64,000 nt of DNA from Rhodosorus marinus CCMP1338 (GCA_029953675.1 JAMWBK010000011.1:992001-1056000); one strand, 5' to 3'. Shown: positions 3,202-64,000, counted from the stretch's first letter. A program made the numbers and translations. Notes: generated by a model not told the origin, from the letters alone.

Positions 3202-6200
3202 CTAGCGATCCCTGGACCTGAAGAGAGTACAAAAATCGACTATACACTCGCTTTCTCCGGTATTTCGGAGGACAACCTCGTGCGCTATTCCAGCCCCGTC
3301 GAAAACTAAATCCTCGTATCCCCACCGGCCACGCGATATTGGTACAGCAGACCCAGCCGTGTTCTTAGCTACGCGCTTACCCTTAAAAATAATCTCCATG
3401 GTTAGCAGTCCTGGTCCAGCTACATAACATCGTAGTCTATACCTTGTCCCCTTCACCATCTGGACGGCCTGCTTTGCTACGGTGCTCGACGGATAGATAT
3501 ACAGCGCTCGGGTACCGTCCAAAACTTCGAGCGTAGTAAACTGCACCCGACCGCTCAAATCCCAGTGGAATATTTTCCGCTCTTCAAAGCTAGGGTTTTT
3601 GATCTTCGCGTCTTTGCCTTGAAGATCGGCTTGTGGATCCCAGGGCTGGACCGTCTGTGGATAATCAAAAGACTCAGAACCTACAGGGGGTGCGAATCCC
3701 TCGAGAATAGGGTAGAGAGAGCACTCATCTGCCCACGCGCTTGCGGTCTGCTGGCTAGGCTGGCCGTGATCGTCACGCTCAAGAACGATGCTATACGTCA
3801 GTGATTTTCGAACTACAAAGTCGACCTCTTGGTTCCTCCACCTGGAGCCTGGAACGTTGAATGTATCTCCGATATTCTCACCAAATAAGGTAGAATCAGC
3901 CCTTATCAAAACACGTATGCTTCCTATCACGTAGCAGTGTAACCTGTACGCCACTTCTCGCTTCAGGGCCACACTTTGTGCGGCTGTGGAGCCTTCCTGG
4001 CGGAGTCTGAGGCCACGGTCTCCCACGAAGCTCTGGCCAACAGAGATACCAGCGCCATTGGACAGCAACCACGGCCCAGGCGCTTGCTCGAAACCGGAGT
4101 TTTGCAGAAGCTGCTCCGGTTCGGGGTAGGTCAAAGGTCCCGTGAACTTGAACAGCGTGCAAAAGTCGACTGTACACTCGCGCTTCCCGCTGTTATAGAG
4201 CGATACCTGATGAGCAATACCTTCCGCGTCGAACACCAAATCCTTGTATCCCCATGGACGACGGGAGAGGGACACAACAGGTCCAACAGAGTTCCTAGAG
4301 ATCCTTTCTCCTTTCAGAGCAACTTCCATACTGAGCGAACCTGGACCAGCGACATAGCATCGGAGCCTGTACCTCCGCCCCTTGGTCAAGAAAACCGTCT
4401 GCGTTGCGACGGTGTCAGACGGATAAACATACATCGCTCGGATTCCATGCAATGCCTCCAGTGATGTAAACTCTTGACGACCGCTGACCTTCCACTGAAA
4501 GCTCTTCTGCTTCTCGAAGCTGGGATTTTTAAGCTTTCCGTTGTCGCCCAGAAGAACGGCTGGTGGATCCCATGCCGAGGGACTGGGTGGGTAATGGAAG
4601 GACGGGGAGCCGATGTGTGGATATCCGTTGATAGATTCGTACAGCGAGCACTTGTCTGTCCAGACCCCGGACTCTTGTAGGCTAGGTTTGCCTTGATTGT
4701 CCCGTTCGAGCACTATCCTGTACTCACCAGACTTACGGACTGCAAAATCTACCTCTTGATTCTTCCAGCTCGAGTTTGAGTTGGGAGTATCAAACCAATC
4801 TCCGAGATTCTGTCCCACCAACGTCGAGTCAGCCCATACTGTAAACCGCAGGCTTCCCTTCACGTAGCAGTGCAACCTGTAGAAACCTACTCGCCTCAGA
4901 GGAACAATTTGAACGGCCTTGGACCCTTCGGCATTGAACCTCAGAGCTCGAGAACCTCTCCTCGACCTTGGAACAGTTTGCATCTCTGTGCTGTCAGAAA
5001 GCGACCAGACCGATGACCTTATCTCAAAACTTGGGTTCCTCAGAAGCTGCTCCGGCTCCGGATCTGTCAGAGGTCCGTCAAACTCAAAGAGCGTACAAAA
5101 ATCCACAAGGCAGTTATCCGTTCCAATGTTATAGATGGATAACTCGTGTGTGATTCCCTCCGCATCAAAGACCACATCTTTATATCCCCATGAACGCCGT
5201 CCAATGCGCTCAATGGGCCCGTACGAGTTCTTAGAAATCCTATCTCCCTTGAAAAGAACCTCCATTGTCACCGTTTCCTGCCCGGCGACATAGCACCGCA
5301 GCCTGTACCTCTTACCCTTATCAAGGGTGACGGTTTGCTTTACAACGGTGCTGGATGGATAGACCTCCATGGCCCTCGATCCTTCCAAAGCTTCGAGTGC
5401 CGTAAACCGCAAGCGCCCGGTCACCGTCCATCGAAAATCCTTCCAGTTCTCAAAGCTCGGGTTTCTGATCTTTCCGTTGTCGGCTAGAAGAAAGCCTGGT
5501 GGTTTCCACGTGGTGCGTTCTTGTGGGTACTTGATAGACTCAGAACCGACGAATGGTGGAACGTTGGGAGCAGAGTAGACAGAGCACTCATCCGCCCAGA
5601 CGCCAGGGATCTGCAGGTTTCGATTACCTCCATCATCTCGCTCCAGGACGATCTCGTACTCGCCCGAGTCACTAATGCGAAAGTCCAGCTCTTGACTCCT
5701 CCACGTTGAGTCAGGCGTGCTCATGGTTTCTCCAAGATTCTCTCCAAAGAACGTCGATTCAGCCTGTATGGAAAGCCGGATACTCCCTCTCACGTAGCAG
5801 TGCAATCTATAGACGTTGCTTCCCCTTAGGTAAACGCTCTGGACAGCCGTGGATCCTTCCTCTTCAAACTTGAGGCTACGGTCCCCAGTAAATACATGCG
5901 CCCGGCTGGTCACTGCACCGCGGGAGAGAGACCACGACTTGGCGCCTTCTTCAAAGCCAGAGTTCTTCAAGTGCTGCTCGGCATTTGGTGTTGACCTTCT
6001 TGGAAAGCTCTCCGTTCCAGTTGTTGTTCCGCACTTTGGTTGATCGTGGCTGCCGCCCAGGAGGCAGCAAGATGAGCCATCACACTCATCAACTTCCAAA
6101 ACTACGGTGCTCAGCCATCCTCCTCCGTCAGGGTACCGCACTTTGATCCGTGGCGCTGCTCCCAGCTCGGTTAGTGGGTACGTAATCACAAACGTGCCAA

Positions 6201-8031
6201 AATATTTGTTTCCATATGGCCTCTTTGGCCCTGCCATTCTGTGATCGTACTCGGCGATTGGTTGTTGGGCATCGTTTACCCAAACGCGGGGCTTGTCCTC
6301 AGTGTTGGGGTTTCTAGAGTGTCCGATACGAATATATCCAACGCCGTTCAGGCTCTGTGGAATGTCTTTGAACAGAAACGTATACGTCTCGTCCTCCTCA
6401 ATGGATACTGGAAACTCTCGACCTTTGTCTGTGCCATCGAAGATCTCCGCCATGTAGTGTCTAGATCGCTGCACCTTTCGGAGCTCAAGAACAGGCCTTT
6501 CAAAATTAACAGCCAATACGTGCATGGCCTCCGGTTGAATCTGAACGCTCTCCGGCACCGCGCTCAGTGTCTCGTTGCTCCACATCATCGTTCCCGCTCT
6601 CTTGAGTCTCTGGGCTCTGTCCTCCTCGGTCAAGTCGCTCTCCTCGAGCCAGATCTTTCTTTCAACGCAGCTTCTTACAGATCCTTGTCCGTACGGAAAT
6701 CTCAGATCGACCTTCACGGCATCGCCCTCCGTTGCCAGGTTCTGAAGAAGGATGTACGCCCGATTCGAGTTTGACACGACGTGTACCTTGACGTTCGGAT
6801 CATCGCTGTAAGAATACACAAAGTCTCCCTCGACGCCTTTGAACAACTCCAAGTAGTTCAGAAGTGGAGTCCAGGTGACCCTCTCCCCGCGTCCACCTTC
6901 CGTAAGCGACCACGGATATCGATGCGGCTGATTGCTGCGGTCGTCGTTGGGGTCCATAGTCAGAAAGTTAATAAACTTGAGGACATTGTCATGGACTCGC
7001 ATTGAGCTCATGAAAGCCTTGAAAGAGTCAGAGAGAATGATAAAATCCCTGCCTGATCTCGGCGGAGCGGGTAAGCCAGTTTTCTTCGGGTACCAGGACC
7101 CATCAAACGCTCCAGCCTCCGTGATCATGTACTTCACTGGTTTTCCATCATCGGATGTCTTCATGGTGTAGGTCTCGAGAAGATCCAGGTTGGCATCCTG
7201 AACAGCCCCTCCCGACGAATAGATGTGCTCTGAAATGAAGTCGAGACATCCCGCAAGGCGCGCAGAGTCGATGAAGTTCTTCATACGCGTCCGCCATCGG
7301 CCAAAGTCTTGCAGATGAGGTCTCGCACTGTTCGCCGCCGGGCCACCCACGATCATATCCGAGTGAGCCGAAGTGATCTCTCTGCACATCTGGCCGCAGA
7401 TGTTTCCAATTCTGGACACCACCGATGACTCCGTCTCCCCTTTGACCAGCCTGAAGTCCTTCCACACTCCCATCGGCTCATTGAAGCACTCCGCGTATCG
7501 TGGCTTTGGGTACCCCTTCTCTTCGCTGAAAAACGCGGTGTAGTAGCTCGCGGAAAACGCGGCAGCTCTGGAGATTTGATTGGCACTCCCTTGTATCCTC
7601 ATCAATTCCGTGGCTTTGTCGGTAGCGACTCGCTCCGCGTCAATCAACCTCTTCCTCATCGGGTTGCAATGACTGCACGTCATCCGACGAACAAACTCCC
7701 TCCCTTCCTCATCCAGCTCGTCCAGCCTGTTCGGAAAGGCGTTTGATCCTGCGAAGGGACCTTCGACTGAAGTCCTCGAAAACCGCACGTCCAGGTCCAC
7801 AACCACGTACTCCATTTTGTCCTGAGCGTTCGCCGGCGCCGCAAGGTTTCCGTGGACGTTGAAAAAGCGGTGTCGATCGAACACATGCTTTCCGTTGGTC
7901 ACCAACGTCGTTCGGAAGTCAACCGTAATAATCGCGCCCTCCACATGCAGCAGCAATAGCGTCAAAAGTACATGCACTGAGCCCATCCAGGCCATCCGTG
8001 CACCTGCGGTAGAAGCGGATAGTCTCTCCAT
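3202..8031 (-). CDS. Gene 1: secreted GH86 beta-porphyranase/agarase-like hydrolase with 3 pairs of CBM4/9-like modules (likely start ATG 7995 or 7986)
   Basis: 1609-aa intronless ORF. Hydrophobic signal (VLLTLLLLHVEG-A). N-terminal FDRHRFFNVH, acid/base CFNEP (E185), RMKNFID..LDFISEHIY, nucleophile MITEAG (E305), then a C-terminal beta domain and six NPSFE/NSGFE-initiated modules. Family call is from recalled GH86 motifs. Confidence 0.8.
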   Translation of the reverse strand: MERLSASTAGARMAWMGSVHVLLTLLLLHVEGAIITVDFRTTLVTNGKHVFDRHRFFNVHGNLAAPANAQDKMEYVVVDLDVRFSRTSVEGPFAGSNAFPNRLDELDEEGREFVRRMTCSHCNPMRKRLIDAERVATDKATELMRIQGSANQISRAAAFSASYYTAFFSEEKGYPKPRYAECFNEPMGVWKDFRLVKGETESSVVSRIGNICGQMCREITSAHSDMIVGGPAANSARPHLQDFGRWRTRMKNFIDSARLAGCLDFISEHIYSSGGAVQDANLDLLETYTMKTSDDGKPVKYMITEAGAFDGSWYPKKTGLPAPPRSGRDFIILSDSFKAFMSSMRVHDNVLKFINFLTMDPNDDRSNQPHRYPWSLTEGGRGERVTWTPLLNYLELFKGVEGDFVYSYSDDPNVKVHVVSNSNRAYILLQNLATEGDAVKVDLRFPYGQGSVRSCVERKIWLEESDLTEEDRAQRLKRAGTMMWSNETLSAVPESVQIQPEAMHVLAVNFERPVLELRKVQRSRHYMAEIFDGTDKGREFPVSIEEDETYTFLFKDIPQSLNGVGYIRIGHSRNPNTEDKPRVWVNDAQQPIAEYDHRMAGPKRPYGNKYFGTFVITYPLTELGAAPRIKVRYPDGGGWLSTVVLEVDECDGSSCCLLGGSHDQPKCGTTTGTESFPRRSTPNAEQHLKNSGFEEGAKSWSLSRGAVTSRAHVFTGDRSLKFEEEGSTAVQSVYLRGSNVYRLHCYVRGSIRLSIQAESTFFGENLGETMSTPDSTWRSQELDFRISDSGEYEIVLERDDGGNRNLQIPGVWADECSVYSAPNVPPFVGSESIKYPQERTTWKPPGFLLADNGKIRNPSFENWKDFRWTVTGRLRFTALEALEGSRAMEVYPSSTVVKQTVTLDKGKRYRLRCYVAGQETVTMEVLFKGDRISKNSYGPIERIGRRSWGYKDVVFDAEGITHELSIYNIGTDNCLVDFCTLFEFDGPLTDPEPEQLLRNPSFEIRSSVWSLSDSTEMQTVPRSRRGSRALRFNAEGSKAVQIVPLRRVGFYRLHCYVKGSLRFTVWADSTLVGQNLGDWFDTPNSNSSWKNQEVDFAVRKSGEYRIVLERDNQGKPSLQESGVWTDKCSLYESINGYPHIGSPSFHYPPSPSAWDPPAVLLGDNGKLKNPSFEKQKSFQWKVSGRQEFTSLEALHGIRAMYVYPSDTVATQTVFLTKGRRYRLRCYVAGPGSLSMEVALKGERISRNSVGPVVSLSRRPWGYKDLVFDAEGIAHQVSLYNSGKRECTVDFCTLFKFTGPLTYPEPEQLLQNSGFEQAPGPWLLSNGAGISVGQSFVGDRGLRLRQEGSTAAQSVALKREVAYRLHCYVIGSIRVLIRADSTLFGENIGDTFNVPGSRWRNQEVDFVVRKSLTYSIVLERDDHGQPSQQTASAWADECSLYPILEGFAPPVGSESFDYPQTVQPWDPQADLQGKDAKIKNPSFEERKIFHWDLSGRVQFTTLEVLDGTRALYIYPSSTVAKQAVQMVKGTRYRLRCYVAGPGLLTMEIIFKGKRVAKNTAGSAVPISRGRWGYEDLVFDGAGIAHEVVLRNTGESECIVDFCTLFRSRDR

Positions 8032-9808: not shown

Positions 9809-9847
9809 GGCTATGCTAATAAAGCCAGTCCAATAAAGCCAGTAAGG
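9809..9847 (+). mobile_element. Possible isolated 3'-tail relic of family A retroelement
   Basis: GGCTATGCTAATAAAGCCAGTCCAATAAAGCCAG resembles the family A tail GGCTATGCTAGTAAAGTCCAGTAAAGTCC at ~56082-56120. Confidence 0.35.
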
Positions 9848-10256
9848 ACCAATACCAATACACCCCCGGATCTCTTCCAAATGGAACACACATGAGCGAT
9901 TAGCACCCAAAACCTCATCCAAGTTGGATTCCACCAAGGAAAACCACCATGAACCCAAGCTTGATGTTGCATATTGAATACTGTAATAAAATAAGCTTTT
10001 GCTGTTGAACCGACAATGGACGATTCACTTTCTGATGTGCTTTATCATTATTTCAATATATTTAGGACCTGCGCGCTGGCCTTTTGAGTTCATCTTTGTT
10101 TTAAATATTTCGTTCATTGTAAGCATTCAATCAATAATAATAATTACGTTGATTCAATTGTGTGTTTGGTTGGAAAGTAAACGCTCTCGAGGGGGAGACA
10201 AAGAAAAATAGCTGAAGGAGTCAAATGGGGGGGGGAGGAAGGTCAACATCAAAGCA

Positions 10257-51075: not shown

Positions 51076-51543
51076 GGTGCAAGTTCAGTAAAGTCCAGTC
51101 CAGTTCAGGGGTGCTAGTAAAGTTCTTGAAGATAGCATACTTACCTGGCCGGGCTGATCGCTCCTCACGTAAGAGCATCTGCTTGGATGAGAGTGAGCAT
51201 AGCACGTCACTTTGTCTTTTCGGACAACTGTGGCAGTCTCGCTTGACTCCTACGAAGTCACCTCTGTGTGACTGTCGACGGCTTAATTTCTGACCATGGG
51301 GAGATTCGCGTTCGCGCGACCTCCCCTAACTCCCCATGGGAACTCTTGAAGATAGCGGAAGCGCTTCCTCTGGTACGCCTTCCCCTCGATTTTCCGCGGG
51401 GCGTCGTTTGCATTTGCAACTACTTCTGTCTTCCGGGTGGGTGAGTTGCGGGGCCTTTCCTATTTGGGTTGGGTTTGGTCGATTATTCTCTCGGTGCGGT
51501 TTCATATTGGTGGTGCAACGTTTCCTTGGCGGATTCCCTCAGG

Positions 51544-53006
51544 ATGGTAGGGATATCTCCGCACTCGACGGAGCCTCCTCCCAAGGAGGCACTGCCAGGT
51601 GGGGGACTCCGTGTTCGCCTCAGCTGCGGCACGTTTTCTTCCGAGGTTGACTTGGAAGGCGCTTCTGGCACCCAGGCGCGTTCACTTATCTCCGCTGTCA
51701 CCAGCCTGATCACGGCTGCGAGTGATCGTGGAGTGCTCCCTCAGCTCACCCAGAAGCTAGGTGGGCTGGAATCGGGATTGCTGGCCAGGTCAAATTCAAA
51801 TTCGGACGAGAATTTGAATTGCGCCAGAGTGGCAGCGTTGGCTGAAGGCAGTCAACATCCGGTCAATCAACATGAACCTGTCCCGGGACAGGCGAGGGCT
51901 GTTGCTTCTGCGCGGGACAGTACGACGTTGGGGAGCGGCAGGCCGGGCCAAAACGCGCTTCAGCGCTCGGGGACTCGAGGCAATGGTGGTGGTGACTGTG
52001 CGGCAACCGGTGTGGAGGAGACTGCAGCTGTGGACTTCCCTCTCTTGGACCAGCCCTCAGGTCGTCACCAGCTCCCGGCTACTTCGGGGGCACGTGGTGG
52101 CCGCAAGGGGGCGCTTCGTACGCATCAGTCTTGCGGAAGGGCACCACTGCCACACGTACGGCGGCTATGCTCCGTTTCATACCATCTCGCGAGCCTCAGG
52201 ATGGACCTGTGGAGACCACTCTCCAATTTCTGTGGGTGCGAAATGTCCGGCCCCAGACTACACGAGGACAGGTTCCGTCTATGCGAGACTTCCGGGACAC
52301 TTTTGCGGAATCGTTAGGGTGCAGCCGGGGTGATTTCTTCTTCGCAAACTATGAGGGCCGCGATGTGCTGTTTTTGGTCTCCGCCACCGCCGCCAAGTAC
52401 CTGGAGGCCTTGCTGGCGAAGCCTACCGAGCAGTGGCCTGAGAGCGCCCGGTGGCCGCGCTGCAACCCGCAGGTGGTTTTGCACTTCGATTTTGACCGTT
52501 TCTCGGGCAATTTCCTGTCTCCGGGAGAAACGGCAGGGCTCTCTGAGCATGAGAGCAGCGTGAAGGCGGCAGCGATCCATTGGCTACGGATTCAGCGCCT
52601 TGAGAGGATCTTGTTGGAGCGGTTCCGGTCGGGCCCTCGTCACCTGCGCATGGCGCTTTCCAGTTTCTTCGATCTGGAGAGGCGACTTGTGCTGACTTCG
52701 CGCTACAAGACAGAGCTGCAGCGGGTGGGGATTTTGGAGGGCTCTGCTTCCAGCACTACTTCCAGCGAGAGTGGTGAGGCAGGGGAGCAGACTGAGGGCA
52801 TGGCGGTGGAGGACGCCCAGGTTACTTTGCTGAAGCCCGCGGGATCCGTTCCGCGAGCCTCGCGGAGTGGGAGGCTCACGACTTTGGTGCGGATAGGAGG
52901 TAAGAGAGCGAGGACCTACTCCCCGGGTCTAAGGGGGAGAAGCACGATTAGCGCTCAGGCACGGCTGCGAGGTCGCAGCCTATGGATCTACAGTCTTATG
53001 TCCTGA
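51544..53006 (+). pseudogene. Element A ORF1 (uncharacterised, possibly RRM-like), split by one frameshift
   Basis: MVGISP..RVRLSCGTFS..VTSLITAAS (frame of 51469) and GASYASVLRKG..FLWVRNVRPQT..RDFRDTFAESLG..FDFDRF (frame of 52131) align in order with element B ORF1. Confidence 0.7.
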
Positions 53007-53028
53007 AGGAGGGCGGAGACTGGGGCAT

Positions 53029-56000: not shown

Positions 56001-56052
56001 CGAGGCGCGCCATCGGCGCCTGGGGTTGCATGCTTCCCTCCCTAGTTATTAG
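53029..56052 (+). CDS. Element A ORF2: reverse transcriptase + CCHC + restriction-like endonuclease
   Basis: CPGPSGLR, LRPIG, QVGVG, VDFRNAFNSV, GVQQGDPCGP, AYHDD, RLGGFG, CQGC..HFLGSC, RTRRH, ADL..YVDLA, FQPFIVESFG. The true start is probably ATG 52982 with a 1-nt shift near 53100. Confidence 0.9.
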   Translation: MAYAFSELAPAVDFFGRRLASPPWGIPPVVLPRGDLLVAGTILDFIFTSLARNIRDTVIWVFLGVMPRLILAPIHTSERRWRVRDRLALFLKGDFEVLQRSYLASSAPSARRTRHGTVSPVPARVQKLVAVGDLSRAARVLEGQAPVLPYDDSLAQTVWSLFPESDVDLSPEFEVFLDRPELARFRIDLTLSESDLEDLLRTSRRGRCPGPSGLRTELLQALSQPGQSALLRILNKLFQGVSGASAPWEHLRQAQLCLLTKPDHQPAHPRLRPIGMVESLRKLAGRWLCQRLRQRVTAFMAPLQVGVGFSGGCELITHGIELERASRPEWGVLVVDFRNAFNSVSRTHALEVLRRVFPEAWPFLSGIYGGESLPYLTTEGTVFQAHTGVQQGDPCGPLLHACALQLVLLRLSTEVSDLRICAYHDDVTLLGTPDTLARGLTAIEAIARRVGLTVETEKCRFLPARDVSLNSLPPTLRLISEREGFEHHGVGLGTDNFVQASCERVLARHKQLTDAIQHLPDSMLQSACLLSRFCAGPRLNYWLRSLPPAWGSWIAAKADEMTLQHWGTLLDEPLDLEAAPDRDLIRAQIALPLRLGGFGVADRGLVCSPAAVASWATALRTLVTFQMRSACLLARALTNEDPVTLPPPLLTIYDGLQHAFRRCNAVPDANRSRFRFWRELLWGRAEAIEDCPLDRVLADDGEASPGSPVADYPGLSRLWSSRTDVIQHSLTWGQHSAAHTVMLNSPLTPPTTAARLRGMGGHLSHLWLTTLPSSLSHRLDAFQFRSAARIYLGLPQAPWHSNRPSFCQGCESRIDACGYHFLGSCGLLRGLRTRRHTRLKYILSEFLTRIGHTVEVKSELPRSISDSAQPRCIADLLVSDAAARRSTYVDLAITCPVASAHLTAAARRRGAAASALRRVKERRYAESMASLPCAEGRSHRFQPFIVESFGHVDKSGLEWLRKCFAEHPTEYLALLRRLSVSLWRYSSDMLSEARHRRLGLHASLPSY

Positions 56053-56123
56053 TTCATCTTCACGCCTTGCGTAGCGCTTCAGGCTATGCTAGTAAAGTCC
56101 AGTAAAGTCCAGTAAAGTCCTGC

Positions 56124-56990
56124 TCAGGGGTGAGGTCAGGCGTCGGTTGAGGCGTGGGCTCCGGCGTCGGCTCCGGCGTCGGGTGAGTGTGTGGTCTGTA
56201 GTGTGGATTCAGGCGTTGGTTTGGGTGTTAAATCTGGAGTTGGTTCTGGTGTCGGCTCAGGCGTAATGTCAGGATGCTCCGGATCCGTTAGAGATCCTGA
56301 AAAATTGAACAACGTGCAAAATCCGACTATACCGTCCTGTTCTCCGATGTTGTAAGACGAATCTCCTGCGTGATTCCTCCGACGTCAAACACCCATATCC
56401 TTGAATCCCCATGAGCCCGCTCAATTCCCACAACCGGGCCATAGGAGTTCTTGGATAGCCTGTTGCCCTTGTAAACAACTTCCATTGTCAGGGTCCCGGT
56501 CCGGATACATAGCATCGCAACCTATACCTCTCTCCTTTGTTTAAGTAGACAGTTTGATATGCGACGGTACTCGATGCACGGATGTACAGCGTTGGGGCAC
56601 CATCCAACACATTCAGCGGTGTTATCTCCTTAGGGCCGCCACTGAACGCCCACCGAATTCCGGTGTCCGGCGAGAAGCTCGGATTTCTAGTTTCTCCTTT
56701 GCCCTGAGGTTCCGCTGGTGGAACCCACGGAGGTATTTCCGGCGGGTAGGCGAAGGACTCGGAACCAGCATTTGTTCGCCCTTCTGGATCAGGGTAAAGA
56801 GAGAACCCATCCGCCCAGACCCCTGCGCTCTGAGATTCTGGGTTCCCAAAGTTGTCCCGCTCCAAGACGATTTCATACTGACGCGACTCGCGAATTACGA
56901 AATCAGCTCCTTAGCTCTCCGAAACCGTGCCGGGAAAACCAAACGTATCGGCACAGTTATCTCCGAACGACATCAAATCAGCCCGTACTG
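56124..56990 (-). pseudogene. Pseudogene: partial A module, complete B module and start of PEPT linker
   Basis: [83 protein letters not shown] followed by PEPT, with stops and frameshifts. Homologous to 38590-38790. Confidence 0.85.
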
Positions 56991-57162
56991 AGGAACGAAT
57001 TTATTATGCTCGCTCAAGTACTTCTTCCATTTCAATTAAGAAATTAGACAAATCACGATTCGCCTTTTTTATATCCCTATTTGTTTTGATTGAGCTATCA
57101 ATATCGTCGAACGAATGGTTTAATCGGAGGCTGAAAGAAAAAACCCCGAGGGGAAAAAAAGA

Positions 57163-59472
57163 CTAAGTGCGGCGAAGAACTCGCGCCTCCAACATCAAAG
57201 CGGCATTCATGTGCCACAGCAGGAAACTTAAGCGGGTAAACAACGATTGAAGACGGTCAGGGCGTTCGCGGAACAGCTCCCGAAGCCAGCGAGAACCAAC
57301 AGAGTCCATGAACCCAAAGCACTCAATGATCAGGGGTACCAAGCGATGTGCTAGTGCCGAAGCACGAACACCAGGGGAAGACAAAGCCCCCGCGTATTTG
57401 ATCTCTTTGTGGCGTCTCATACTGGCGGCGGCAGATCCACGGCGTTCCCCCGCAGCCGGGAGATACCGACTAGCTTGAGGATTAGGAACAGCAAGATCAA
57501 CGTATGTGGTACGGCGGCTGTCGTCACAGGTGATCACCAGGTCGGCTACACGGTGTTCATCATTTTGAAAGTCCGCGACGGGTAAAGGTTTTTCACGTTC
57601 GCTTTCCAGACCGGCTTGCCGGACTATAGGCCGAAGTTCCCGGTATAACAGGTTCAAGATCCGTGTATGGCGGCGGGTTCGAGCACCTTTCACCGCCGGG
57701 CAACTAGCGAGCAGGTGGGCGCCAAAATCTGCGTTGTCTTCAGTCTGAGAGCAGAGAGGGCACGACGAACCCATCTCGTACGGCCAGGGGGGCTGATGTA
57801 AGCCGAGGTATAAGCGCAGTGAAGTACGCACTTCGAAATCCGACAGTGTGAGTGGCGGAAGGGCTGGTACGGTCATGAGCCACTGAGAGCTAATGACCCC
57901 TCCAAGACTACGTAGGCGGGCGCGAGCGCGAGAAGATGAGACCATCTGCGCGAGGAGTCGGCCATATGCAGCACGGTGCAAGTCCCAAGAAATGATATTT
58001 TGCATCGCATCCGTGCGTGCTTGAGCTCGGCTCCCAGCGCGCTGGGAATTATCAGGAGGATCAACTGGAACTTCTTCTTCTGCGGCAACCACTGGGTCAA
58101 TCTCCACTAGAACAGGTTCAGGCGCAGGACGAATCCCCGAGGCGGAGCCTCGAGAGCGGTCAAATACAGCTCGCCAGTCAGGAAGACGGGGTTGAACGGT
58201 TTCGGGGAGACTAGTACAGGAATTCAGGGCGGCTTGGAGCTCCAGAAACAAGTCTTGGGCGCTTTCCGGTACGCTGGGAAGCAAGACACCCCGCGAGAGG
58301 CTCGCCATCAAATTGCGGAACTTCGAGATACCCAAACTGCTCAAAGTGGGAAGTGCGGTTCCCCAGGCCCCTACTGCGGCTGCAGGTTGGACCACAACAC
58401 GGTTGCAGAGGCCCAGTCCCCCCAATCGCAATGGGAGGCCTACCTGGGCGCGCACAACATCACAGGTGGGTCGCGACAGAGCGCGCAGCTCCTCATCGAG
58501 AAAATACCCAAGGTCACGGAAACTTTCAGCATCCGCACGAGTGGCCAACCACCGGCCCCAATGAGTTGGAAGTGAGCGGAGCCAATAGGTTAACCGCTCA
58601 CTGCAACAATACCGAAACAACAACGACGAGCACTGGAGGAAGCCCGGAGGTAGCCGTCGAAGCTCTGCAACCAGCTGTCTGTGCTTACCGAGGAGCTGCA
58701 GCAACTCGCCTTCAACGAAGGACGGCGACCCGTAGGGGATGCCTAAGTGGAAAAAACCATCCGGTCTCCAAATATCCTGGAACGACGCAGGTACCTGCTG
58801 CTCTTGTGCAGCTACACCTCCCCAGTAGAACGATTTGTGATGATTAACCTCCAAGTCAACCCGCGAAGCCAAGGAGCGTAGACGATCATAAGCGAGCGCT
58901 AGAGTATCGGGGGGCCCCAAGAGGCACACATCGTCGTGGTATGCAACCGTACGAACCTGCGGGAATTCGGAGCGAAGACAAAGCAAGACGAGTTGTGGTC
59001 CACAGGCATGTAGGAAAGGAGACAAGGGATCACCCTGTTGTACCCCTGTTCGCGCCGCAAACGTGTGTGAGGAAGCGCCAAGGGTGTCATAGGTAGCCCC
59101 ACGACCAAGCGGAGAATAAAGACTACTAACAAAAGGAAAGCCTACAGGGAAGACTTCGCGCACCACGTGCATGAGAGCCGGACGAGAGACGCGGTTGAAC
59201 GCATTGGTAAAATCTACAGAGAGGAGCCCAGAATCTGGAGAGTACGCCATTTCCGAACGGAGTAAAACAGACAACAACTCACAGCCACCACGATAGCCCA
59301 CGCCTAACTGCACGTGCCCAAAGAAACGGCGGGATTCGGGAACCAGGATTTTCACTAACCACCGCGGCGCCAATTTGCGGACCACCTCAACCAGGCCAAT
59401 AGGGCGAATAGCAGGGCTCGAGGCCGTGTGACCGGGCTTCGAAAGCAGACACAACTGCGAACGCCCGACCAA
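57163..59472 (-). pseudogene. Element B ORF2, 3' part (RT core, CCHC, RLE)
   Basis: IRPIG, QLGVG, VDFTNAFNRV, GVQQGDPLSP, AYHDD, RLGGLG, CPLC..HLLASC, RTRRH, VADL..YVDLAV, LVPLIIECFG. Separated from its 5' part by the nested copy. Confidence 0.9.
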
Positions 59473-60179
59473 GAACGAATGAATGAATGGTTTAATTGGA
59501 GGCTGAAAAAAAAAAACCCCGAGGGGAAAAAAAGACTAAGCGCGGCGAAGTACTCGCGCCTCCAACATCAAAGCGGCATTCATGCGCCACAGCAGGAAAC
59601 TTAAGCGGGTAAACAACGATTGAAGACGGTCAGGGCGTTCGCGGAACAACTCCCGAAGCCAGCGAGAACCAACAGAGTCCATGAACCCAAAGCACTCAAT
59701 GATCAGGGGTACCAAGCGATGTGCTAGTGCCGAAGCACGAACACCAGGGGAAGACAAAGCCCCCGCGTATTTGATCTCTTTGCGGCGTCTCATGCTGGCG
59801 GCGGCAGATCCACGGCGCTCCCCCGCAGCCGGGAGATAACGACTAGCTTGAGGGTTAGGAACAGCAAGATCAACGTATGTGGTACGGCGGCTGTCGTCAC
59901 AGGTGATCACCAGGTCGGCTACACGGCGTTCATCATTTTGAAAGTCCGCGACGGGTAAAGGTTTCTCACGTTCGATTTCCAGACCGGCTTGCCGGACTAT
60001 ATGCCGAAGTTCCCGGTATAACAGGTTCAAGATCCGTGTGTGGCGGCGGGTTCGAGCACCTTTCACCGCCGGGCAACTAGCGAGCAGGTGGGCGCCAAAA
60101 TCTGCGTTGTCTTCAGTCTGAGAGCAGAGAGGGCACGACGAACCCATCTCGTACGGCCAAGGGGGCTGATGTAAGCCGG
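59473..60179 (-). mobile_element. 5'-truncated family B copy nested in element B ORF2
   Basis: Duplicates ~57110-57807 almost exactly and ends CCATTCATTCATTCGTTC. Its removal rejoins ...ECAWF to LVGRSQ... in frame. Confidence 0.92.
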
Positions 60180-61013
60180 GAACCACGCACACTCACACAG
60201 GGGATCACCATTCACAAGCGCTTCGACCACCGACGCCAACGCCTTCAAACCTTCATCACTTAAGAAACGGAGATATTCCACCCGCAGCCCCGAGGGCCCT
60301 GGAGAACGGCCCTTCGGAGCATCATGAACCAACTCACGTACCGCCTCCAGATTGACCACTAACCGCGCATTGGGATGTGGCGCGGCGCGGTACTCTTCCA
60401 ACACTGATTCAAACGAGGAGTCCCAAGGGGAGCCTTCCGAGGGAAAGAGCAAACGGAGCGGTGAAGAAAGATCATCGGAGTATGGAACCACAGGTTGCCG
60501 CTGCTGGAGGATCCCGGCTGCCCGCCGCAGATCACCGCCTGCCACCGCGTGACGCGCCCGATTCTGTCGAGAAGACCTGAAAGCTGAGGGAGCACTAGGA
60601 GAAAAGGAAGAGAGAGAAGCGAAATAAAGACGTTCGAGGTCCTCAAAGTCGCCGGAAAGGAACATTTGCAGTTTTCGGCGAGGGTGGACCCGGCGAGGAT
60701 GTGGGTTGAGGGTGACGGTAGAGGAGGTGAGCACGAGGCGGGGAAAAAAGAACAAGAGTTCCCATAGAAGAGAGCAGTGAGGGTTCGCGGCGACCTGCTG
60801 CCAGAGAAAATCCAACACCAATCCTAGGGGCTTATGAAGTCGACGAGGGAGCCGTACGGCCGTGCTCCCACGACAAAGGGGAAGGGAACCGTCCGGGTAG
60901 GAGGCGACAAGGTGCGAAAACCACGAGAGAACACGCTCATGCCAGGCTGCGCGGTCACTGGTAAACAGGGGTAACCGGGACGACACGCACGCGGAGGAGG
61001 AAGGCTCAGACAT
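60180..61013 (-). pseudogene. Element B ORF2, 5' part (from ATG 61013)
   Basis: FPRLVL..FLSGDFEDL..GDLRRAA..SPGPSGLR aligns with element A MPRLIL..FLKGDFEVL..GDLSRAA..CPGPSGLR. The ATG overlaps the ORF1 stop at 61006. Confidence 0.85.
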
Positions 61014-62303
61014 CGGGCCTCCCCTCAGTCGGGAAGGCAGATCGAATATCCGGAGGAGGTGCCTCGGAGGGAGGCTCAGGAGCCGCACGACGCTTACGTG
61101 GGGGGCGCACAAAGGAACTAAAAGACCTGAAGAAAGTAGACACAGGGTTTTCAGCTGCGGAGTCTTGACTGAGGGTGTCCAGAGCCAGCGGATTCGGAGA
61201 GGCCGATGGTGCTTCTGCCATGTCGGTGTCACGAGCCTCGGAGACAGGGCGAGGGGAGGAAGGGTGCTCAAGAGTCGGCGGCAGAAGGTCAAACGCCGGG
61301 TGGGCTTCCAGCAGGGTGGCCTCGGTGGAGAGGAAGGCCTCTAGCGCGGTGCGGAGGACCCCGCGAGGAGGAAAACGCGCGAAGAGGCTCGCCTGTATGC
61401 GCGAGAGCCGCGCCGCATGAGTGTGTAGCGCGACAACCGAAGCCTGCGAGGCATCCAGGTTTTGCAAGGCCGACGGAGGAACCCAGCCGGCGTCAAAACG
61501 ATCGAACTCGACAAACAAAGAGACATGGGGACGAGTCAGTATCATGTTGGCCAGAGCAGAGCGCTGGGGCGCGGGGGTGGTTACAAGGGATTGAAGGAAG
61601 TGGTAAGCCGAGTCAGTAACAAGAAAACAGTATGAGGGCCCGTGAAGTCCACATATAGGAATTCAGACGGGGCGACCCCAAGGGAGGAAGCCATGGTGTG
61701 GCGAAAATCGCGGTAGTGGACGGGCGCGCGGCCCCGACCACGAGAGGGGGTCTGGGGACGCACGTTCGTCATCCAAACAAAGTGGAACGGAGATAGTTGG
61801 CGAGAAGAGTCAATAGGGGTGTGTTTTGGCATCATACGCACCATTGCCGTCGTGCGTTGTTCAGAAGAGCCCCTGCGGAGGACCTGCGAATAGGAAGCAC
61901 GTGGGGCACTGGAGGGAGCAGGATTCGGGCCCGACGCGGGCCCAGGAGGCGTCTGTCCTTCGATAGGGGTAGGCCAGTCGGAATCAGGAATGACCGGAGC
62001 GGAGCGCTCGGGTCGGTTGAAGGCAGGCCCCGCTGTGCCGTGCGGATCCGCGGGGACGTCCACCGGGGGGTATGGGGCAGGCGCGGAGGCGGAGAAGCGC
62101 TCCAAATAGGCGATCAGCAGGGGCAGGCGGTGTTCCTGGGAAGCAGTCACAAGAAGACTCGTCAGTTTCGAGCAGATCCCATGGGCCAACTCGTCAGCGC
62201 AGTCCGTGAGGGTGGCCGCGGTACTAAACCCGCCCACGCTGAGCTCCACGCGCGCTGAGAGAACGGCTCCGTCCACCGGAATAGGTGGGGAAACCCCAAC
62301 CAT
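61006..62303 (-). pseudogene. Element B ORF1 (uncharacterised, possibly RRM-like), split by a 1-nt frameshift near 61625
   Basis: MVGVSP..RVELSVGGFS..ASYSQVLRRG..FVWMTNVRPQT..RDFRHTMASSLG, then in the next frame FLVTDSAYHFLQSL..FVEFDRF. Collinear with element A ORF1. Confidence 0.75.
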
Positions 62304-63414: not shown

Positions 63415-64000
63415 CTAACTCAGCTCTGGATCAGTGAGCGCCCCGCTAAACTGCAGCAACGTGCAAAAGTCAACGAGACATTCGCTGTTTCCTACGTTGT
63501 ATAAGAGCACCTCGTTCGTGATTCCGGCGGCGTCAAAGACCATTTCCTTGTAGCCCCAGTCCCCATAGGGAATCGGAGTAACTGGCCCGAAGGAGTTCTT
63601 GCATAACCTGTTGTTCTGGTAGAGGATCTCCATGGTCAGCGGTCCCGATCCGCGGACATAGCACCGCATTCTGTACCGCTCGTCTCTGCTCAGCCACACA
63701 GTCTGACGAGCGACAGTCTCCGCGGGATAGAGGTACATAGCTCGCACGTTGCGCAGTGGCTGGACTGCGGAAAACTCAAGAGAACCGCTCACAGTCCATC
63801 GAAAATTCCTTTGGGGCTCAAAACTCGGGTTCTTCAGCTCCTGACCGGGCTCTAAAAGTACCGCTGGAGGATCCCATGTCGGGAAATCTGTTGCTAGGTT
63901 GTAAGCTCCCGAACCGACGTAAGGAGGGACCCCGTCAGTAGCGAGATAGAGTGAGCAGTCATCTACCCAGACGCCACCGCTCTGAGCTGCGGGATCACCG
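63415..64000 (-). CDS. Gene 5 (partial, 5' end outside window): C-terminal modules of another GH86-like paralogue
   Basis: Frame is open from 63999: GDPAAQSGGVWVDDCSLY..ELKNPSFEPQRNFRWTVSG..VDFCTLLQFSGALTDPELS*. Near-identical to the ends of genes 3 and 4, with the same 3' flank. Confidence 0.85.
   Translation of the reverse strand, partial: GDPAAQSGGVWVDDCSLYLATDGVPPYVGSGAYNLATDFPTWDPPAVLLEPGQELKNPSFEPQRNFRWTVSGSLEFSAVQPLRNVRAMYLYPAETVARQTVWLSRDERYRMRCYVRGSGPLTMEILYQNNRLCKNSFGPVTPIPYGDWGYKEMVFDAAGITNEVLLYNVGNSECLVDFCTLLQFSGALTDPELS

What the first reader, a model, noticed from the sequence alone, without database searches (positions are those of the whole stretch)
3202..64000. Expanded tandem array of giant secreted GH86 porphyranase/agarase-like enzymes in an apparently eukaryotic genome
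Seen: at least five co-oriented, intronless 1600-1900 aa genes with signal peptides and both catalytic Glu motifs (FNEP and [IV]TE[AT]G, 120 aa apart in gene 1), in a retrotransposon-rich, operon-free context. Known: these motifs match GH86 clan GH-A beta-porphyranases/agarases, whose characterised members I know of are bacterial. Inference: this is a dedicated, amplified system for cutting or remodelling red-algal sulfated galactans, either the host's own wall or mucilage or a food or host substrate. I am not aware of a description of such a eukaryotic array, but could not check.
Basis: partly seen in the sequence, partly recalled or inferred. Interest (0 to 1): 0.85.

Follow-up and report, generated by a model that had tools for sequence, protein, structure and literature searches.

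The report
Tandem GH86 galactanase genes, red alga
A piece of a eukaryotic (most likely red-algal) chromosome carries a tandem array of at least five very large secreted enzymes of family GH86, a family so far studied only in bacteria that digest agar and porphyran; the same family and a similar, mis-annotated array also lie undescribed in the published Rhodosorus marinus genome.

Summary
Four complete, co-oriented, single-exon minus-strand genes (1609, 1929, 1913 and 1619 aa) each have an N-terminal signal-like hydrophobic segment and the FNEP and [IV]TE[AT]G motifs exactly 120 residues apart. A fifth copy is cut by the window edge, and three decayed fragments are also present.

GH86 membership is firm. 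Only GH86 structures match by sequence (E 1.6e-35 to 1.7e-28) and by predicted fold (TM about 0.7). The two Glu align with the bacterial catalytic pair.

The contig is eukaryotic: it carries a full-length U1 snRNA and R2-like LINE copies between the genes. All named close relatives come from the red algae Rhodosorus marinus and Bangiopsis, so the host is very probably a related rhodophyte.

Each enzyme carries 3-4 pairs of a lineage-specific, CBM-like beta-sandwich module. All paralogs are under purifying selection (dN/dS 0.14-0.20).

Rhodosorus has a homologous three-gene tandem array, so the array is not unique to this organism.

The most likely role is remodelling or lysis of the alga's own galactose-rich sheath. 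This is inferred, not shown. Four cleft-type residues conserved in bacteria are replaced, so the substrate may not be classical agarose or porphyran.

No paper describing a eukaryotic GH86 was found. Verdict: new variant of a known kind, interest about 0.6.

The parts
3202..8031 (-). Gene 1 (1609 aa): signal-like N-terminus, GH86 region, then three A-B module pairs. It is the most divergent paralog (65-67% identity to the others in the catalytic region).
6052..7932 (-). Gene 1 GH86 catalytic region (aa 34-660): a (beta/alpha)8 barrel plus two beta-sandwich domains, ending in the Cys-rich CCLLGG linker.
   Evidence: PDB phmmer 2e-18 to 5TA1; profile 1.6e-35; AF2 model pLDDT 68.5, pTM 0.73; Foldseek TM 0.69-0.72 to GH86 structures
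7477..7479 (-). Gene 1 Glu185 codon (FNEP), the predicted acid/base.
   Evidence: Aligns with the NEP motif of the GH86 structures; E in 21/21 red-algal and 99% of presumed-bacterial sequences
7117..7119 (-). Gene 1 Glu305 codon (ITEAG), the predicted nucleophile.
   Evidence: Aligns with BuGH86 E322, which is Q in the 5TA0 E322Q mutant; invariant in all 143 aligned sequences
3205..5973 (-). Gene 1 C-terminal region: three A (about 168 aa) and B (about 142 aa) CBM-like module pairs.
15426..21215 (-). Gene 2 (1929 aa): signal-like N-terminus, GH86 region, four A-B pairs; Glu186 and Glu306.
24828..30569 (-). Gene 3 (1913 aa): signal-like N-terminus, GH86 region, four A-B pairs; Glu175 and Glu295. 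Pairs 3 and 4 are its most similar pairs (dS 0.65), suggesting a comparatively recent internal duplication.
40465..45324 (-). Gene 4 (1619 aa): signal-like N-terminus, GH86 region, three A-B pairs; Glu186 and Glu306. It is a recent duplicate of gene 3 (93% aa identity in the catalytic region, dS 0.20).
63418..64000 (-). Gene 5, C-terminal 194 aa only. The reading frame is open to the window edge; 94% identical to gene 3 and 90% to gene 4.
   Evidence: its downstream DNA 62430-63999 is 89% identical to 39463-41052 downstream of gene 4
2927..3226 (-). Module fragment at the 3' end of gene 1. It is 94% nt identical to gene 2 (17715-17972), far above the 64-70% gene 1 / gene 2 background. Likely an ectopic recombination or conversion patch at the point where gene 1 ends early.
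38595..38930 (-). Decayed module fragment downstream of gene 4.
56277..57100 (-). Decayed, frameshifted A-B fragment (pseudogene piece) between two LINE insertions; homologous to the fragment at 38595-38930.
51137..51326 (+). Full-length U1 spliceosomal snRNA gene, a marker of a eukaryotic nuclear genome.
   Evidence: Rfam RF00003, 85 bits against a gathering score of 69.5, model positions 1-166
51469..56104 (+). Non-LTR retrotransposon: ORF1-like region 51469-53006 and ORF2 53029-56052 (reverse transcriptase plus a C-terminal Cys/His and nuclease-like region).
   Evidence: PDB: R2 retrotransposon protein 9NL3 at 2.6e-14, LINE-1 ORF2p at about 1e-7; named database relatives are from Pyropia and Porphyra
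57109..62303 (-). Two adjacent copies of a second LINE family (57109-59472, 5'-truncated; 59477-62303, longer), inserted between gene 5 and the pseudogene fragment.

Best explanation
The window is part of a nuclear chromosome of a red alga, probably a member or close relative of the Stylonematophyceae and not Rhodosorus marinus CCMP1338 itself. It holds a tandemly duplicated family of secreted, catalytically competent GH86 enzymes.

Each protein has four parts. (1) A signal peptide. (2) A GH86 unit (TIM barrel plus two beta-sandwich domains), which should cleave a beta-galactosidic bond by the clan GH-A retaining double-displacement mechanism. The Glu of FNEP would act as acid/base and the Glu of [IV]TE[AT]G as nucleophile. 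(3) A Cys-rich linker. (4) Three or four pairs of two related, lineage-specific CBM-like beta-sandwich modules (A and B). These would hold the enzyme by multivalent binding on a gel-like polysaccharide.

The most likely job is controlled cutting or loosening of the alga's own galactose-rich, cell-bound sheath or wall. Examples are growth, cell separation and release of monospores from the thick matrix.

The family most probably entered an ancestor of these algae once from bacteria. It then diversified into many paralogs. In this lineage it was amplified by tandem segmental duplication (genes 3, 4 and 5 most recently) and by internal duplication of the A-B pairs.

Shown: the gene structures, GH86 homology and fold, conserved catalytic residues, purifying selection, the eukaryotic context, the red-algal relatives, and the duplication structure.

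Inferred: secretion, activity, substrate, carbohydrate binding by A-B, the biological role, and the HGT origin.
For: GH86 membership:
- phmmer of gene 1 hits only GH86 chains, plus one marginal match (E 0.059) of the repeat region to an alginate-lyase chain: 5TA1 at 2e-18, 8H97 at 1.4e-12, 4AW7 at 2.3e-12.
- The family profile gives 1.6e-35, 1.1e-30 and 1.7e-28 and nothing else at E <= 1e-3.
- The seven best Foldseek matches of the AF2 model are the GH86 structures (E 6e-34 to 1e-29, TM 0.63-0.72). The next families (GH30/39/51/79) score E >= 1e-14 and TM <= 0.5.

Catalytic residues:
- The TE[AT]G Glu aligns with BuGH86 E322, the experimentally assigned nucleophile, which is Q in 5TA0.
- E181, N184, E185, H269, Y271, D283, E305 and N586 are invariant in 21/21 red-algal sequences and conserved in >=98% of the 122 presumed-bacterial ones.

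Functional constraint: dN/dS is 0.14-0.20 in the catalytic regions, including the young pair gene 3 / gene 4 (dS 0.20), and 0.1-0.3 in the modules.

Secretion: N-terminal h-regions are present and there is no C-terminal hydrophobic tail.

Modules:
- The AF2 model of an A-B pair shows two beta-sandwiches (pLDDT 73).
- Fold matches include the tandem CBM22 (4XUP) and a porphyran-binding CBM (8XMZ, TMt 0.70).
- Relatives carry weak or faint PF02018 CBM_4_9 hits.
- A and B are homologous (hhalign 98.5%).

Eukaryote and red alga:
- U1 snRNA and R2-like LINEs, whose named relatives are Pyropia and Porphyra.
- The closest proteins (41-52% identity) are Rhodosorus marinus transcripts.
- In an NJ tree of 143 sequences the four window genes are monophyletic (100%). 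They sit inside a 15-member clade whose named members are all Rhodosorus (100%). A 21-member clade that adds Bangiopsis is separate from all the other sequences, of which every named one is bacterial (96%).
- Rhodosorus homologs are single-exon genes among XPG, Cpn10 and cyclin genes on a 2.47 Mb contig.

Substrate context:
- Stylonematophyceae keep their polysaccharide bound to the cell, with 58-87 mol% galactose in three genera. A sulfated galactan is reported from the Chroodactylon sheath (PMC9031348; PMC8523428).
- The class reproduces by monospores formed from vegetative cells inside thick matrices.

Precedent: Chondrus crispus makes its own GH16 beta-porphyranase, thought to derive from bacterial HGT (PMC9771727).

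Expression of the family: the Rhodosorus and Bangiopsis members come from MMETSP transcriptomes.
Against: - No expression, secretion or activity data exist for the window genes themselves.
- The source species is not identified. The proteins are absent from the 15-billion-protein collection.
- Identity to characterised GH86 enzymes is only 18-29%.
- Only 34 of 56 positions conserved in the presumed-bacterial sequences are kept. R346, W363, W397 and R404 (gene 1 numbering; R or W in 107-117 of 122 presumed-bacterial sequences) are replaced by V/T/I, D/Q, L/F and F. Subsites outside -1 may therefore be rebuilt, and the substrate may not be agarose or porphyran.
- The position matching the BpGH86A sulfate-pocket Ser is Thr here, but that column also varies among bacteria, so it is not diagnostic.
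- Sequence similarity of A/B to any defined CBM family is marginal (best E 0.002). The A-B model is of moderate confidence and its inter-domain geometry is unreliable.
- The NJ tree uses simple distances and cannot name a donor lineage.
- Some Stylonematophyceae are epiphytes, so an outward-directed role is not excluded.
Confidence: 0.6

Rival explanations
1. Same enzymes and same self-directed role, but a different substrate. The red-algal GH86 clade would have shifted specificity to a non-agar polymer of the sheath, such as a xylose- or methyl-substituted galactan, a xylogalactan heteropolymer or a glycoprotein glycan. 'Agarase/porphyranase' would then be misleading.
For: Four positions that are R or W in 107-117 of 122 presumed-bacterial GH86 sequences are replaced across the red-algal clade, and only 34 of 56 conserved positions are kept. 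Bound polysaccharides of Stylonematophyceae vary widely: galactose is 19-87 mol% and xylose up to 59 mol%. The A/B modules have no clear match to known agar- or porphyran-binding CBM families by sequence.
Against: The -1 machinery is fully conserved. Every characterised GH86 enzyme found in the literature searches here acts on agar-type galactans. A sulfated galactan is reported in a Stylonematophyceae sheath. One single-domain fold match of the modules is a porphyran-binding CBM.
Confidence: 0.3
2. Outward-directed weapon or tool. The enzymes would be secreted to soften or digest the agar or porphyran walls of other red seaweeds on which the alga lives as an epiphyte (attachment, penetration, nutrient scavenging), or to compete with neighbouring red algae.
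For: Several Stylonematophyceae genera are described as epiphytic. Gene-family amplification and long multi-CBM tails are typical of enzymes that attack insoluble foreign polysaccharide. Family members of known function degrade seaweed walls.
Against: The family is also large in Rhodosorus marinus, a free-living unicell. Red algae are phototrophs with no known uptake pathway for agar fragments. No companion genes such as GH117, GH50, sulfatases or transporters are present in the window.
Confidence: 0.12
3. Wall-building transglycosylases. As retaining enzymes they might mainly cut and re-join galactan chains, as plant XTH enzymes do with xyloglucan, and so integrate new polymer into the sheath rather than degrade it.
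For: The retaining clan GH-A chemistry allows transglycosylation. The altered cleft residues could favour sugar acceptors. Permanent tethering by 6-8 binding modules fits a matrix-resident remodelling enzyme.
Against: None of the papers read or searched here reports transglycosylation as the main activity of a GH86 enzyme. No sequence feature examined here separates hydrolase from transglycosylase.
Confidence: 0.08
4. Not a working enzyme system: the copies would be decaying duplicates or non-catalytic lectin-like matrix proteins.
For: Three decayed fragments show that copies do die in this locus. No direct expression data exist for the window genes.
Against: Four ORFs of 4.8-5.8 kb are intact. 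dN/dS is 0.14-0.20 even for the youngest pair. Both catalytic Glu and the conserved core are invariant. Homologs are transcribed in Rhodosorus and Bangiopsis.
Confidence: 0.03
5. Bacterial contamination or a chimeric assembly: the GH86 genes would belong to an associated agarolytic bacterium.
For: GH86 is otherwise known from bacteria. Red-algal cultures carry agarolytic bacteria.
Against: The genes are interleaved with R2-like LINEs, 5'-truncated LINE copies and a U1 snRNA on one contig. There are no bacterial genes, operons or tRNAs. Intergenic spacers of 3-18 kb are duplicated along with the genes. The nearest relatives lie among eukaryotic housekeeping genes on Mb-scale Rhodosorus contigs. 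The closest hits outside the red-algal clade, of which the named ones are bacterial, are only 26-29% identical.
Confidence: 0.02

Closest known systems
Bacterial GH86 beta-agarases and beta-porphyranases (BuGH86 5TA1/5TA0, BpGH86A 4AW7, Aga86A_Wa 8H97)
   Same: Same family by sequence profile (E 1e-28 to 1e-35) and predicted fold (TM about 0.7): a (beta/alpha)8 barrel plus two beta-sandwich domains. Same NEP acid/base and (S/T)E nucleophile. Conserved H, Y, D and N core.
   Different: Only 18-29% identity. Eukaryotic nuclear genes with a eukaryotic-type signal peptide. Four strongly conserved bacterial R/W positions are replaced. The C-terminal array of 6-8 lineage-specific modules replaces the Ig-like or other accessory domains seen in the bacterial hits. 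The genes form a paralog array, not a polysaccharide-utilisation locus with transporters and exo-enzymes.
Rhodosorus marinus and Bangiopsis GH86-like proteins (e.g. KAJ8904124 NDN08_000651, KAJ8904075, KAJ8901447; MMETSP transcripts)
   Same: Same clade (100% and 96% bootstrap). Same architecture: signal-like N-terminus, GH86, CCLLGG linker, A-B modules. Single-exon genes. Rhodosorus has a co-oriented three-gene tandem array and a convergent pair of genes with about three A-B pairs each, all within about 62 kb on contig JAMWBK010000011.1.
   Different: 41-52% identity at best, so a different species. The direct counterparts in Rhodosorus carry one A-B pair (about 980 aa) against 3-4 pairs here. 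The window array has at least five copies interspersed with LINEs. The Rhodosorus genes carry only automatic names or truncated models, and no publication on them was found.
Chondrus crispus CcGH16-3 beta-porphyranase (PMC9771727)
   Same: A red alga encoding its own endo-galactanase of a family otherwise known from marine bacteria. It is thought to derive from bacterial HGT followed by duplication, and is proposed to act on the alga's own matrix.
   Different: A different family and fold (GH16 beta-jelly-roll, against GH86 TIM barrel). Three dispersed genes in a macroalga, against a large amplified family in Proteorhodophytina-type algae. For CcGH16-3 the activity is demonstrated; here it is not.
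Multi-CBM bacterial glycanases (e.g. tandem CBM22 of Xyn10C, 4XUP; porphyran-binding CBM, 8XMZ)
   Same: The predicted A and B modules are beta-sandwich domains in tandem, attached to a glycoside hydrolase. The fold matches these CBMs.
   Different: No significant sequence match to any defined CBM family (best E 0.002). There are two conserved Cys per module. The word-limited search of the 5.8-billion-cluster collection returned only two further proteins carrying the module, both from Rhodosorus. Binding has not been tested.

Membership tests
Glycoside hydrolase family 86 (CAZy GH86, clan GH-A) | Significant sequence similarity of the catalytic region to GH86 members, and better than to any other GH family | tested here: met
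   phmmer gives 2e-18 to 2e-12 to 5TA1, 8H97 and 4AW7. The profile of nine family members gives 1.6e-35, 1.1e-30 and 1.7e-28, with no other PDB sequence at E <= 1e-3. Full HMMER scan: 274 relatives, of which every named one outside the red-algal clade is a bacterial agarase-type protein.
Glycoside hydrolase family 86 (CAZy GH86, clan GH-A) | (beta/alpha)8 barrel followed by two Ig-like beta-sandwich domains | tested here: met
   AF2 model of gene 1 aa 31-660 (pLDDT 68.5, pTM 0.73): alternating strand/helix pattern to about residue 370, then beta-rich. Foldseek ranks 1-7 are all GH86 entries, TM 0.63-0.72 over 549-646 columns; the next families score TM <= 0.5. The model is of moderate confidence.
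Glycoside hydrolase family 86 (CAZy GH86, clan GH-A) | Catalytic acid/base Glu in the N-E-P motif and nucleophile Glu about 120-130 residues downstream | tested here: met
   E185/E305 (gene 1), E186/E306 (genes 2 and 4), E175/E295 (gene 3). The nucleophile aligns with BuGH86 E322, which is Q in 5TA0. Both are invariant in 21/21 red-algal sequences and in 99-100% of the 122 presumed-bacterial ones.
Glycoside hydrolase family 86 (CAZy GH86, clan GH-A) | Pfam porphyranase domains PF18206 (catalytic subdomain 1) and PF18040 (BPA C-terminal) | tested here: inconclusive
   Precomputed hits exist for the closest relatives (P0001-P0005, P0006, P0008, P0012). No Pfam or dbCAN scan of the window proteins themselves was possible. 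NCBIfam gave no hit.
Glycoside hydrolase family 86 (CAZy GH86, clan GH-A) | Endo-beta-agarase or beta-porphyranase activity with retention of configuration | not testable with these tools
   Needs a recombinant enzyme. The cleft-type positions R346, W363, W397 and R404 differ from the bacterial consensus, so specificity cannot be transferred by homology.
Carbohydrate-binding module (beta-sandwich type, CBM4/9/16/22-like) | Beta-sandwich (jelly-roll) fold appended to a carbohydrate-active enzyme | tested here: met
   The AF2 model of one A-B pair gives two beta-sandwich domains (pLDDT 73; the linker is below 50). Foldseek matches the tandem CBM22 4XUP (1e-8) and the porphyran-binding CBM 8XMZ (TMt 0.70, rmsd 3.8).
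Carbohydrate-binding module (beta-sandwich type, CBM4/9/16/22-like) | Significant sequence similarity to a defined CBM family | tested here: inconclusive
   Profile against PDB: the N-terminal domain of an alginate lyase at E 0.0022, and chains of an S-layer-associated endoglucanase (3OEB/2ZEX) and an arabinogalactan endo-galactanase (2XOM) at 0.16-0.55; these last are, from my memory and not checked here, CBM16 and CBM61 modules. Relatives carry weak or faint PF02018. The profile search of the large protein collection found only Rhodosorus proteins.
Carbohydrate-binding module (beta-sandwich type, CBM4/9/16/22-like) | Demonstrated carbohydrate binding | not testable with these tools
   Needs affinity electrophoresis, ITC or glycan arrays with isolated A, B and A-B constructs.
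Eukaryotic (rhodophyte) nuclear gene | Physical linkage to eukaryote-only features and phylogenetic nesting among red-algal nuclear genes | tested here: met
   U1 snRNA at 85 bits. R2-like LINEs with red-algal relatives. The window clade nests within Rhodosorus paralogs (100% bootstrap). Rhodosorus orthologs are flanked by XPG, Cpn10 and cyclin genes. The species itself is not identified.

The most novel reading that the evidence does not exclude
This would be the first recognised eukaryote-encoded GH86 family. A single ancient bacterial-to-rhodophyte transfer would have been domesticated into a large multigene family (at least 10 divergent clusters in Rhodosorus and a tandem array of at least five genes here). 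It would have fused to a previously unclassified, rhodophyte-specific CBM family (the A/B modules), and would serve as the autolysin system that opens the galactan sheath for cell separation and monospore release. Its cleft would be rebuilt for a red-microalgal galactan unlike agarose or porphyran, giving a new GH86 specificity and a new CBM family.
Probability: 0.4. Interest if true: 0.75.

Novelty: new variant of a known kind. Interest (0 to 1): 0.6.

Why it matters
All GH86 enzymes found in the literature here are bacterial tools for eating red seaweed walls, including the well-known transfer of porphyranases into the gut bacteria of seaweed-eating people. A large, selected, amplified GH86 family inside red algae would reverse that picture: the producers of the polymer would also hold this enzyme family.

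It adds a second, independent case, after the Chondrus GH16 porphyranase, of red algae using bacterial-type galactanases on their own matrix. It also offers a way into how early-branching red algae with thick sheaths grow, divide and release spores.

On the practical side, it points to possible new specificities for structural analysis or processing of red-microalgal polysaccharides, and to a candidate new CBM family. It also flags concrete annotation errors in a published reference genome.

Tried and rejected
- NCBIfam scan of genes 1 and 2: no family. The library is prokaryote-centred and has no GH86 model that fires.
- Exact look-up of the gene 1 protein in public assemblies: not on record, so the source species could not be named.
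- Word-indexed homolog search: only five Rhodosorus proteins. The exhaustive HMMER scan was needed to see the wider family.
- JGI/TARA metagenome scan with the family alignment: only three distant hits at 22-34% identity, from marine and human-gut metagenome contigs, and no close relative.
- Naming the organism behind Logan run SRR22824290, which holds two divergent family members: no name could be obtained. The Stylonematophyceae paper lists only a BioProject.
- Using the -2 subsite determinant (BpGH86A S326 / BuGH86 Met) to call porphyranase or agarase. The window enzymes have Thr there, but the column is T/V/L/P/I/M among bacteria, so I rejected it as diagnostic. The paper's 'M396' could not be reconciled with SEQRES numbering. 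The Met that aligns with S326 is at SEQRES 372, which is 369 in the paper's numbering. The BpGH86A E279 numbering used for this offset is recalled from memory.
- The idea that the U1 snRNA was carried in by the adjacent LINE, as with an snRNA-targeting element. The duplicate segment upstream of gene 3 lacks both U1 and LINE, but it also lacks part of the neighbouring pseudogene fragment. A deletion there explains the difference equally well. The second LINE family has no U1 at its 5' end. Left open.
- Bacterial-contig and pseudogene readings: rejected, see the rival explanations.

Full report
**1. What is in the window**

The minus strand carries four very long ORFs: 3202-8031 (1609 aa), 15426-21215 (1929 aa), 24828-30569 (1913 aa) and 40465-45324 (1619 aa).

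A tblastn of these proteins against the window found more copies.
- A fifth copy has only its C-terminal 194 residues visible (63418-64000). It is 94% identical to gene 3 and its frame is open to the window edge.
- Three decayed fragments of the repeat region lie at 2927-3226, 38595-38930 and 56277-57100. The last is full of stops.

Each complete protein starts with a short polar stretch. This is followed by a 12-residue hydrophobic core (mean Kyte-Doolittle 2.4-3.4) and a small-residue cleavage-type site. None has a C-terminal hydrophobic tail. FNEP and [IV]TE[AT]G are present in all four, with the two Glu exactly 120 residues apart.

The caveat is that only four of the 'at least five' genes can be checked in full.

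**2. Family assignment**

Three lines agree on GH86.
- *Sequence.* Apart from one marginal match (E 0.059) of the repeat region to an alginate-lyase chain, phmmer of gene 1 against all PDB sequences returns only GH86 chains: BuGH86 5TA1/5TA0 (2e-18), Aga86A_Wa 8H97 (1.4e-12) and BpGH86A 4AW7 (2.3e-12). A profile of the four window catalytic regions plus five Rhodosorus proteins raises these to 1.6e-35, 1.1e-30 and 1.7e-28. It matches nothing else at E <= 1e-3.
- *Fold.* An AlphaFold2 model of gene 1 residues 31-660 (pLDDT 68.5, pTM 0.73) finds the GH86 entries as its seven best Foldseek matches (E 6e-34 to 1e-29, TM 0.63-0.72). The next families, GH30, GH39, GH51 and GH79, follow at E >= 1e-14 and TM <= 0.5.
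- *Catalytic residues.* The TE[AT]G Glu aligns with the residue that is Glu in 5TA1 and Gln in 5TA0. The structure paper identifies it as the nucleophile E322.

I aligned 143 sequences to a family HMM. E181, N184, E185, H269, Y271, D283, E305 and N586 (gene 1 numbering) are invariant in all 21 red-algal sequences and conserved in at least 98% of the other 122 sequences, which I take to be bacterial.

Conservation is not uniform, however.
- Only 34 of the 56 positions conserved in at least 85% of those presumed-bacterial sequences are kept.
- Four positions that are Arg or Trp in 107-117 of the 122 are replaced in most of the red-algal clade. These are R346 (to V/T/I), W363 (to D/Q), W397 (to L/F) and R404 (to F).

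I read this as intact chemistry at subsite -1 with a rebuilt outer cleft.

**3. The C-terminal two-thirds**

After a Cys-rich linker (…DEC.G..CCLLGG) the proteins consist of alternating modules. Module A is about 168 aa with its linker, and module B about 142 aa. Both begin with NPSFE and both contain YRL.CYV and a second conserved Cys. Genes 1 and 4 have three A-B pairs; genes 2 and 3 have four.
- A and B are homologous to each other (hhalign probability 98.5%, E 3e-15).
- An AF2 model of one pair gives two beta-sandwich domains joined by a disordered Pro-rich linker (pLDDT 73).
- Foldseek matches tandem beta-sandwich accessory domains. These include the CBM22-1/CBM22-2 pair of a xylanase (4XUP) and the carbohydrate-binding-like C-terminal domains of several insecticidal crystal proteins. 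As a single domain it also matches a porphyran-binding CBM (8XMZ, TM 0.70, rmsd 3.8 Å).
- By sequence the link to defined CBM families is only marginal (best E 0.002).
- A profile search of the 5.8-billion-cluster collection found the module only in Rhodosorus.

I therefore call these modules CBM-like and lineage-specific. Binding is an inference.

**4. Whose genome**

The window contains a full-length U1 spliceosomal snRNA at 51137-51326 (85 bits, model positions 1-166, with the 5' splice-site-pairing end and the Sm site). It has no tRNAs.

Between the GH86 genes lie non-LTR retrotransposons.
- One is on the plus strand at 51469-56104. Its ORF2 matches R2 retrotransposon proteins (2.6e-14) and LINE-1 ORF2p.
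- Two adjacent copies of a second family lie on the minus strand at 57109-62303.
- 5'-truncated copies lie at 12096-12956, 14328-14644 and 49716-50013.
- The only named database relatives of the ORF2 are from the red algae Pyropia and Porphyra.

The closest relatives of the GH86 region (41-52% identity over 88-99% of the query) are proteins of the unicellular red alga Rhodosorus marinus.

An exhaustive HMMER scan of 1.84 billion representatives found 274 relatives. Every named sequence in the top tiers is from Rhodosorus (transcriptomes and the GCA_029953675.1 genome) or from Bangiopsis sp. CCMP1999. From about E 1e-25 downward, the named hits are bacterial agarases from Agaribacterium and Lentimonas.

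I built a neighbour-joining tree (143 sequences, 572 columns, 100 bootstraps).
- The four window genes form a clade (100%).
- That clade groups with Rhodosorus P0001-P0004 (75%).
- It lies inside a 15-member clade whose named members are all Rhodosorus (100%).
- A 21-member clade that adds Bangiopsis is separated from all the other sequences (96%).

Other Rhodosorus paralogs branch outside the window clade. The window organism therefore shares old duplications with Rhodosorus, so it is most simply a related red alga.

It is not R. marinus CCMP1338. The window proteins are absent from the collection that holds that genome, and the best identity is 52%.

In Rhodosorus the homolog NDN08_000651 is a single-exon gene. 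It lies between XPG nuclease, Cpn10, HAD hydrolase and cyclin genes on a 2.47 Mb contig. This excludes bacterial contamination for the family as a whole.

**5. How the array arose**

Self-alignment shows tandem segmental duplication of gene plus flanks.
- The gene 3 unit (about 24.6-33.6 kb) matches the gene 4 unit (about 40.2-48.1 kb) at 91% in the gene and 80-90% upstream.
- The DNA downstream of gene 5 matches that downstream of gene 4 at 89%.

Divergence in the catalytic region is dS 0.20 for genes 3 and 4, and 1.1-1.4 for all other pairs. dN/dS is 0.14-0.20 throughout. The modules show 0.1-0.3. All four complete copies have therefore been kept by purifying selection since duplication.

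Two further points:
- Gene 3 has one more A-B pair than gene 4, and its pairs 3 and 4 are its most similar (dS 0.65).
- A patch 94% identical to gene 2 sits at the premature end of gene 1. This indicates ectopic exchange within the array.

**6. The array is not unique**

I searched the Rhodosorus loci directly.
- Contig JAMWBK010000011.1 (1,083,342-1,104,349) holds three co-oriented GH86 genes about 7 kb apart. Each has one A-B pair and is 48-51% identical to gene 2. Only their C-terminal tails are annotated, as 176-, 335- and 248-aa hypothetical proteins.
- About 17 kb further on lies a convergent pair of GH86 genes with about three A-B pairs each. One of them is annotated in truncated form.

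So the tandem arrangement and the multi-module architecture predate the window organism. What is special here is the degree: at least five copies, each with three or four pairs.

**7. Most likely function**

I propose secreted retaining endo-beta-galactanases. Their multivalent CBM-like tails would hold them on the alga's own cell-bound, galactose-rich matrix. They would cut that matrix for growth, cell separation and spore release.

The biological context comes from papers.
- Stylonematophyceae retain their exopolysaccharide on the cell. Galactose makes up 58-87 mol% of it in Chroothece, Bangiopsis and Rhodaphanes (PMC9031348).
- A sulfated galactan has been isolated from the Chroodactylon sheath (cited).
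- The class has thick walls and matrices and reproduces by monospores formed directly from vegetative cells (PMC8523428).
- The Chondrus crispus GH16 beta-porphyranase is a precedent for a red alga using a bacterial-type galactanase, interpreted as HGT followed by duplication (PMC9771727).

The main uncertainty is the substrate, because of the replaced cleft residues. Smaller rivals are an outward-directed role on host seaweeds, since some relatives are epiphytes, and a mainly transglycosylating role. Pseudogene and contamination readings are effectively excluded.

**8. Novelty**

Five full-text searches combined GH86 with red algae, Rhodophyta, Rhodosorus, Porphyridium, nuclear genome and horizontal gene transfer. 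They returned only bacterial work. The Chondrus paper does not mention GH86.

The sequences are nevertheless public. They carry automatic names such as 'Beta-porphyranase A C-terminal domain-containing protein'.

I rate this a new variant of a known kind. It is a known enzyme family in an unreported domain of life, with a new accessory module and an amplified tandem organisation. The function is unproven and the source species unidentified.

Noticed in passing
window 51137-51326 (+), next to 51469-56104 (+): A full-length U1 snRNA gene, with a 30-nt expansion in one stem-loop, lies 140 nt upstream of a full-length R2-like LINE. The duplicated segment upstream of gene 3 lacks both. U1 and the LINE could have arrived together (an snRNA-associated LINE), or the other copy could have suffered a deletion.
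   Followed up: partly
window 57109-59472 (-) and 59477-62303 (-); fragments at 12096-12956, 14328-14644 and 49716-50013 (+): A second LINE family is present as two head-to-tail copies (97-98% identical over their 3' ends) and several 5'-truncated copies, one with a 100% identical 275-nt stretch. This points to recent activity. The ORF2 C-terminus has a Cys/His motif and a nuclease-like region, as in R2-type elements.
   Followed up: partly
window 38357-38543 and 50649-51000: A 12-nt minisatellite (GTGGG[CT]TCAGGC, 15-29 copies) is conserved at the same position in two duplication units. In one frame it reads as Gly/Ser/Val repeats and creates spurious ORFs.
   Followed up: no
window 2931-3187 versus 17715-17972: A 257-nt patch just after the stop codon of gene 1 is 94% identical to an internal module of gene 2, although the two genes are otherwise 64-70% identical. 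This is evidence of ectopic recombination or gene conversion, and it coincides with the truncated last B module of gene 1.
   Followed up: partly
L004 (Rhodosorus marinus JAMWBK010000011.1:1083342-1104349), 372-2987, 8093-10990, 15220-18147: Three co-oriented tandem GH86 genes in the published Rhodosorus genome. Only the C-terminal A-B tails are annotated (176, 335 and 248 aa 'hypothetical proteins'); the catalytic parts are unannotated.
   Followed up: yes
L003 (Rhodosorus marinus JAMWBK010000011.1:1121488-1145381), about 8753-13888 (+) and 20543-15501 (-): A convergent pair of GH86 genes, each with about three A-B pairs. The annotated model NDN08_007293 starts inside the catalytic domain and so is truncated.
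   Followed up: yes
L001 and L005 (Logan SRR22824290 contigs): One unnamed sequencing run holds two divergent members of the eukaryotic GH86 clade (P0006, P0012). P0012 also carries precomputed Pfam hits PF27624 (Porph_assoc) and a weak CBM_4_9. The organism is unknown, probably another red alga.
   Followed up: partly
PMC5849685, text on the BuGH86 -2 subsite: The Met called 'M396' does not fit the SEQRES numbering derived from E322. The Met that aligns with BpGH86A S326 is at SEQRES 372, which is residue 369 in the paper's numbering. This may be a digit transposition in the paper.
   Followed up: partly
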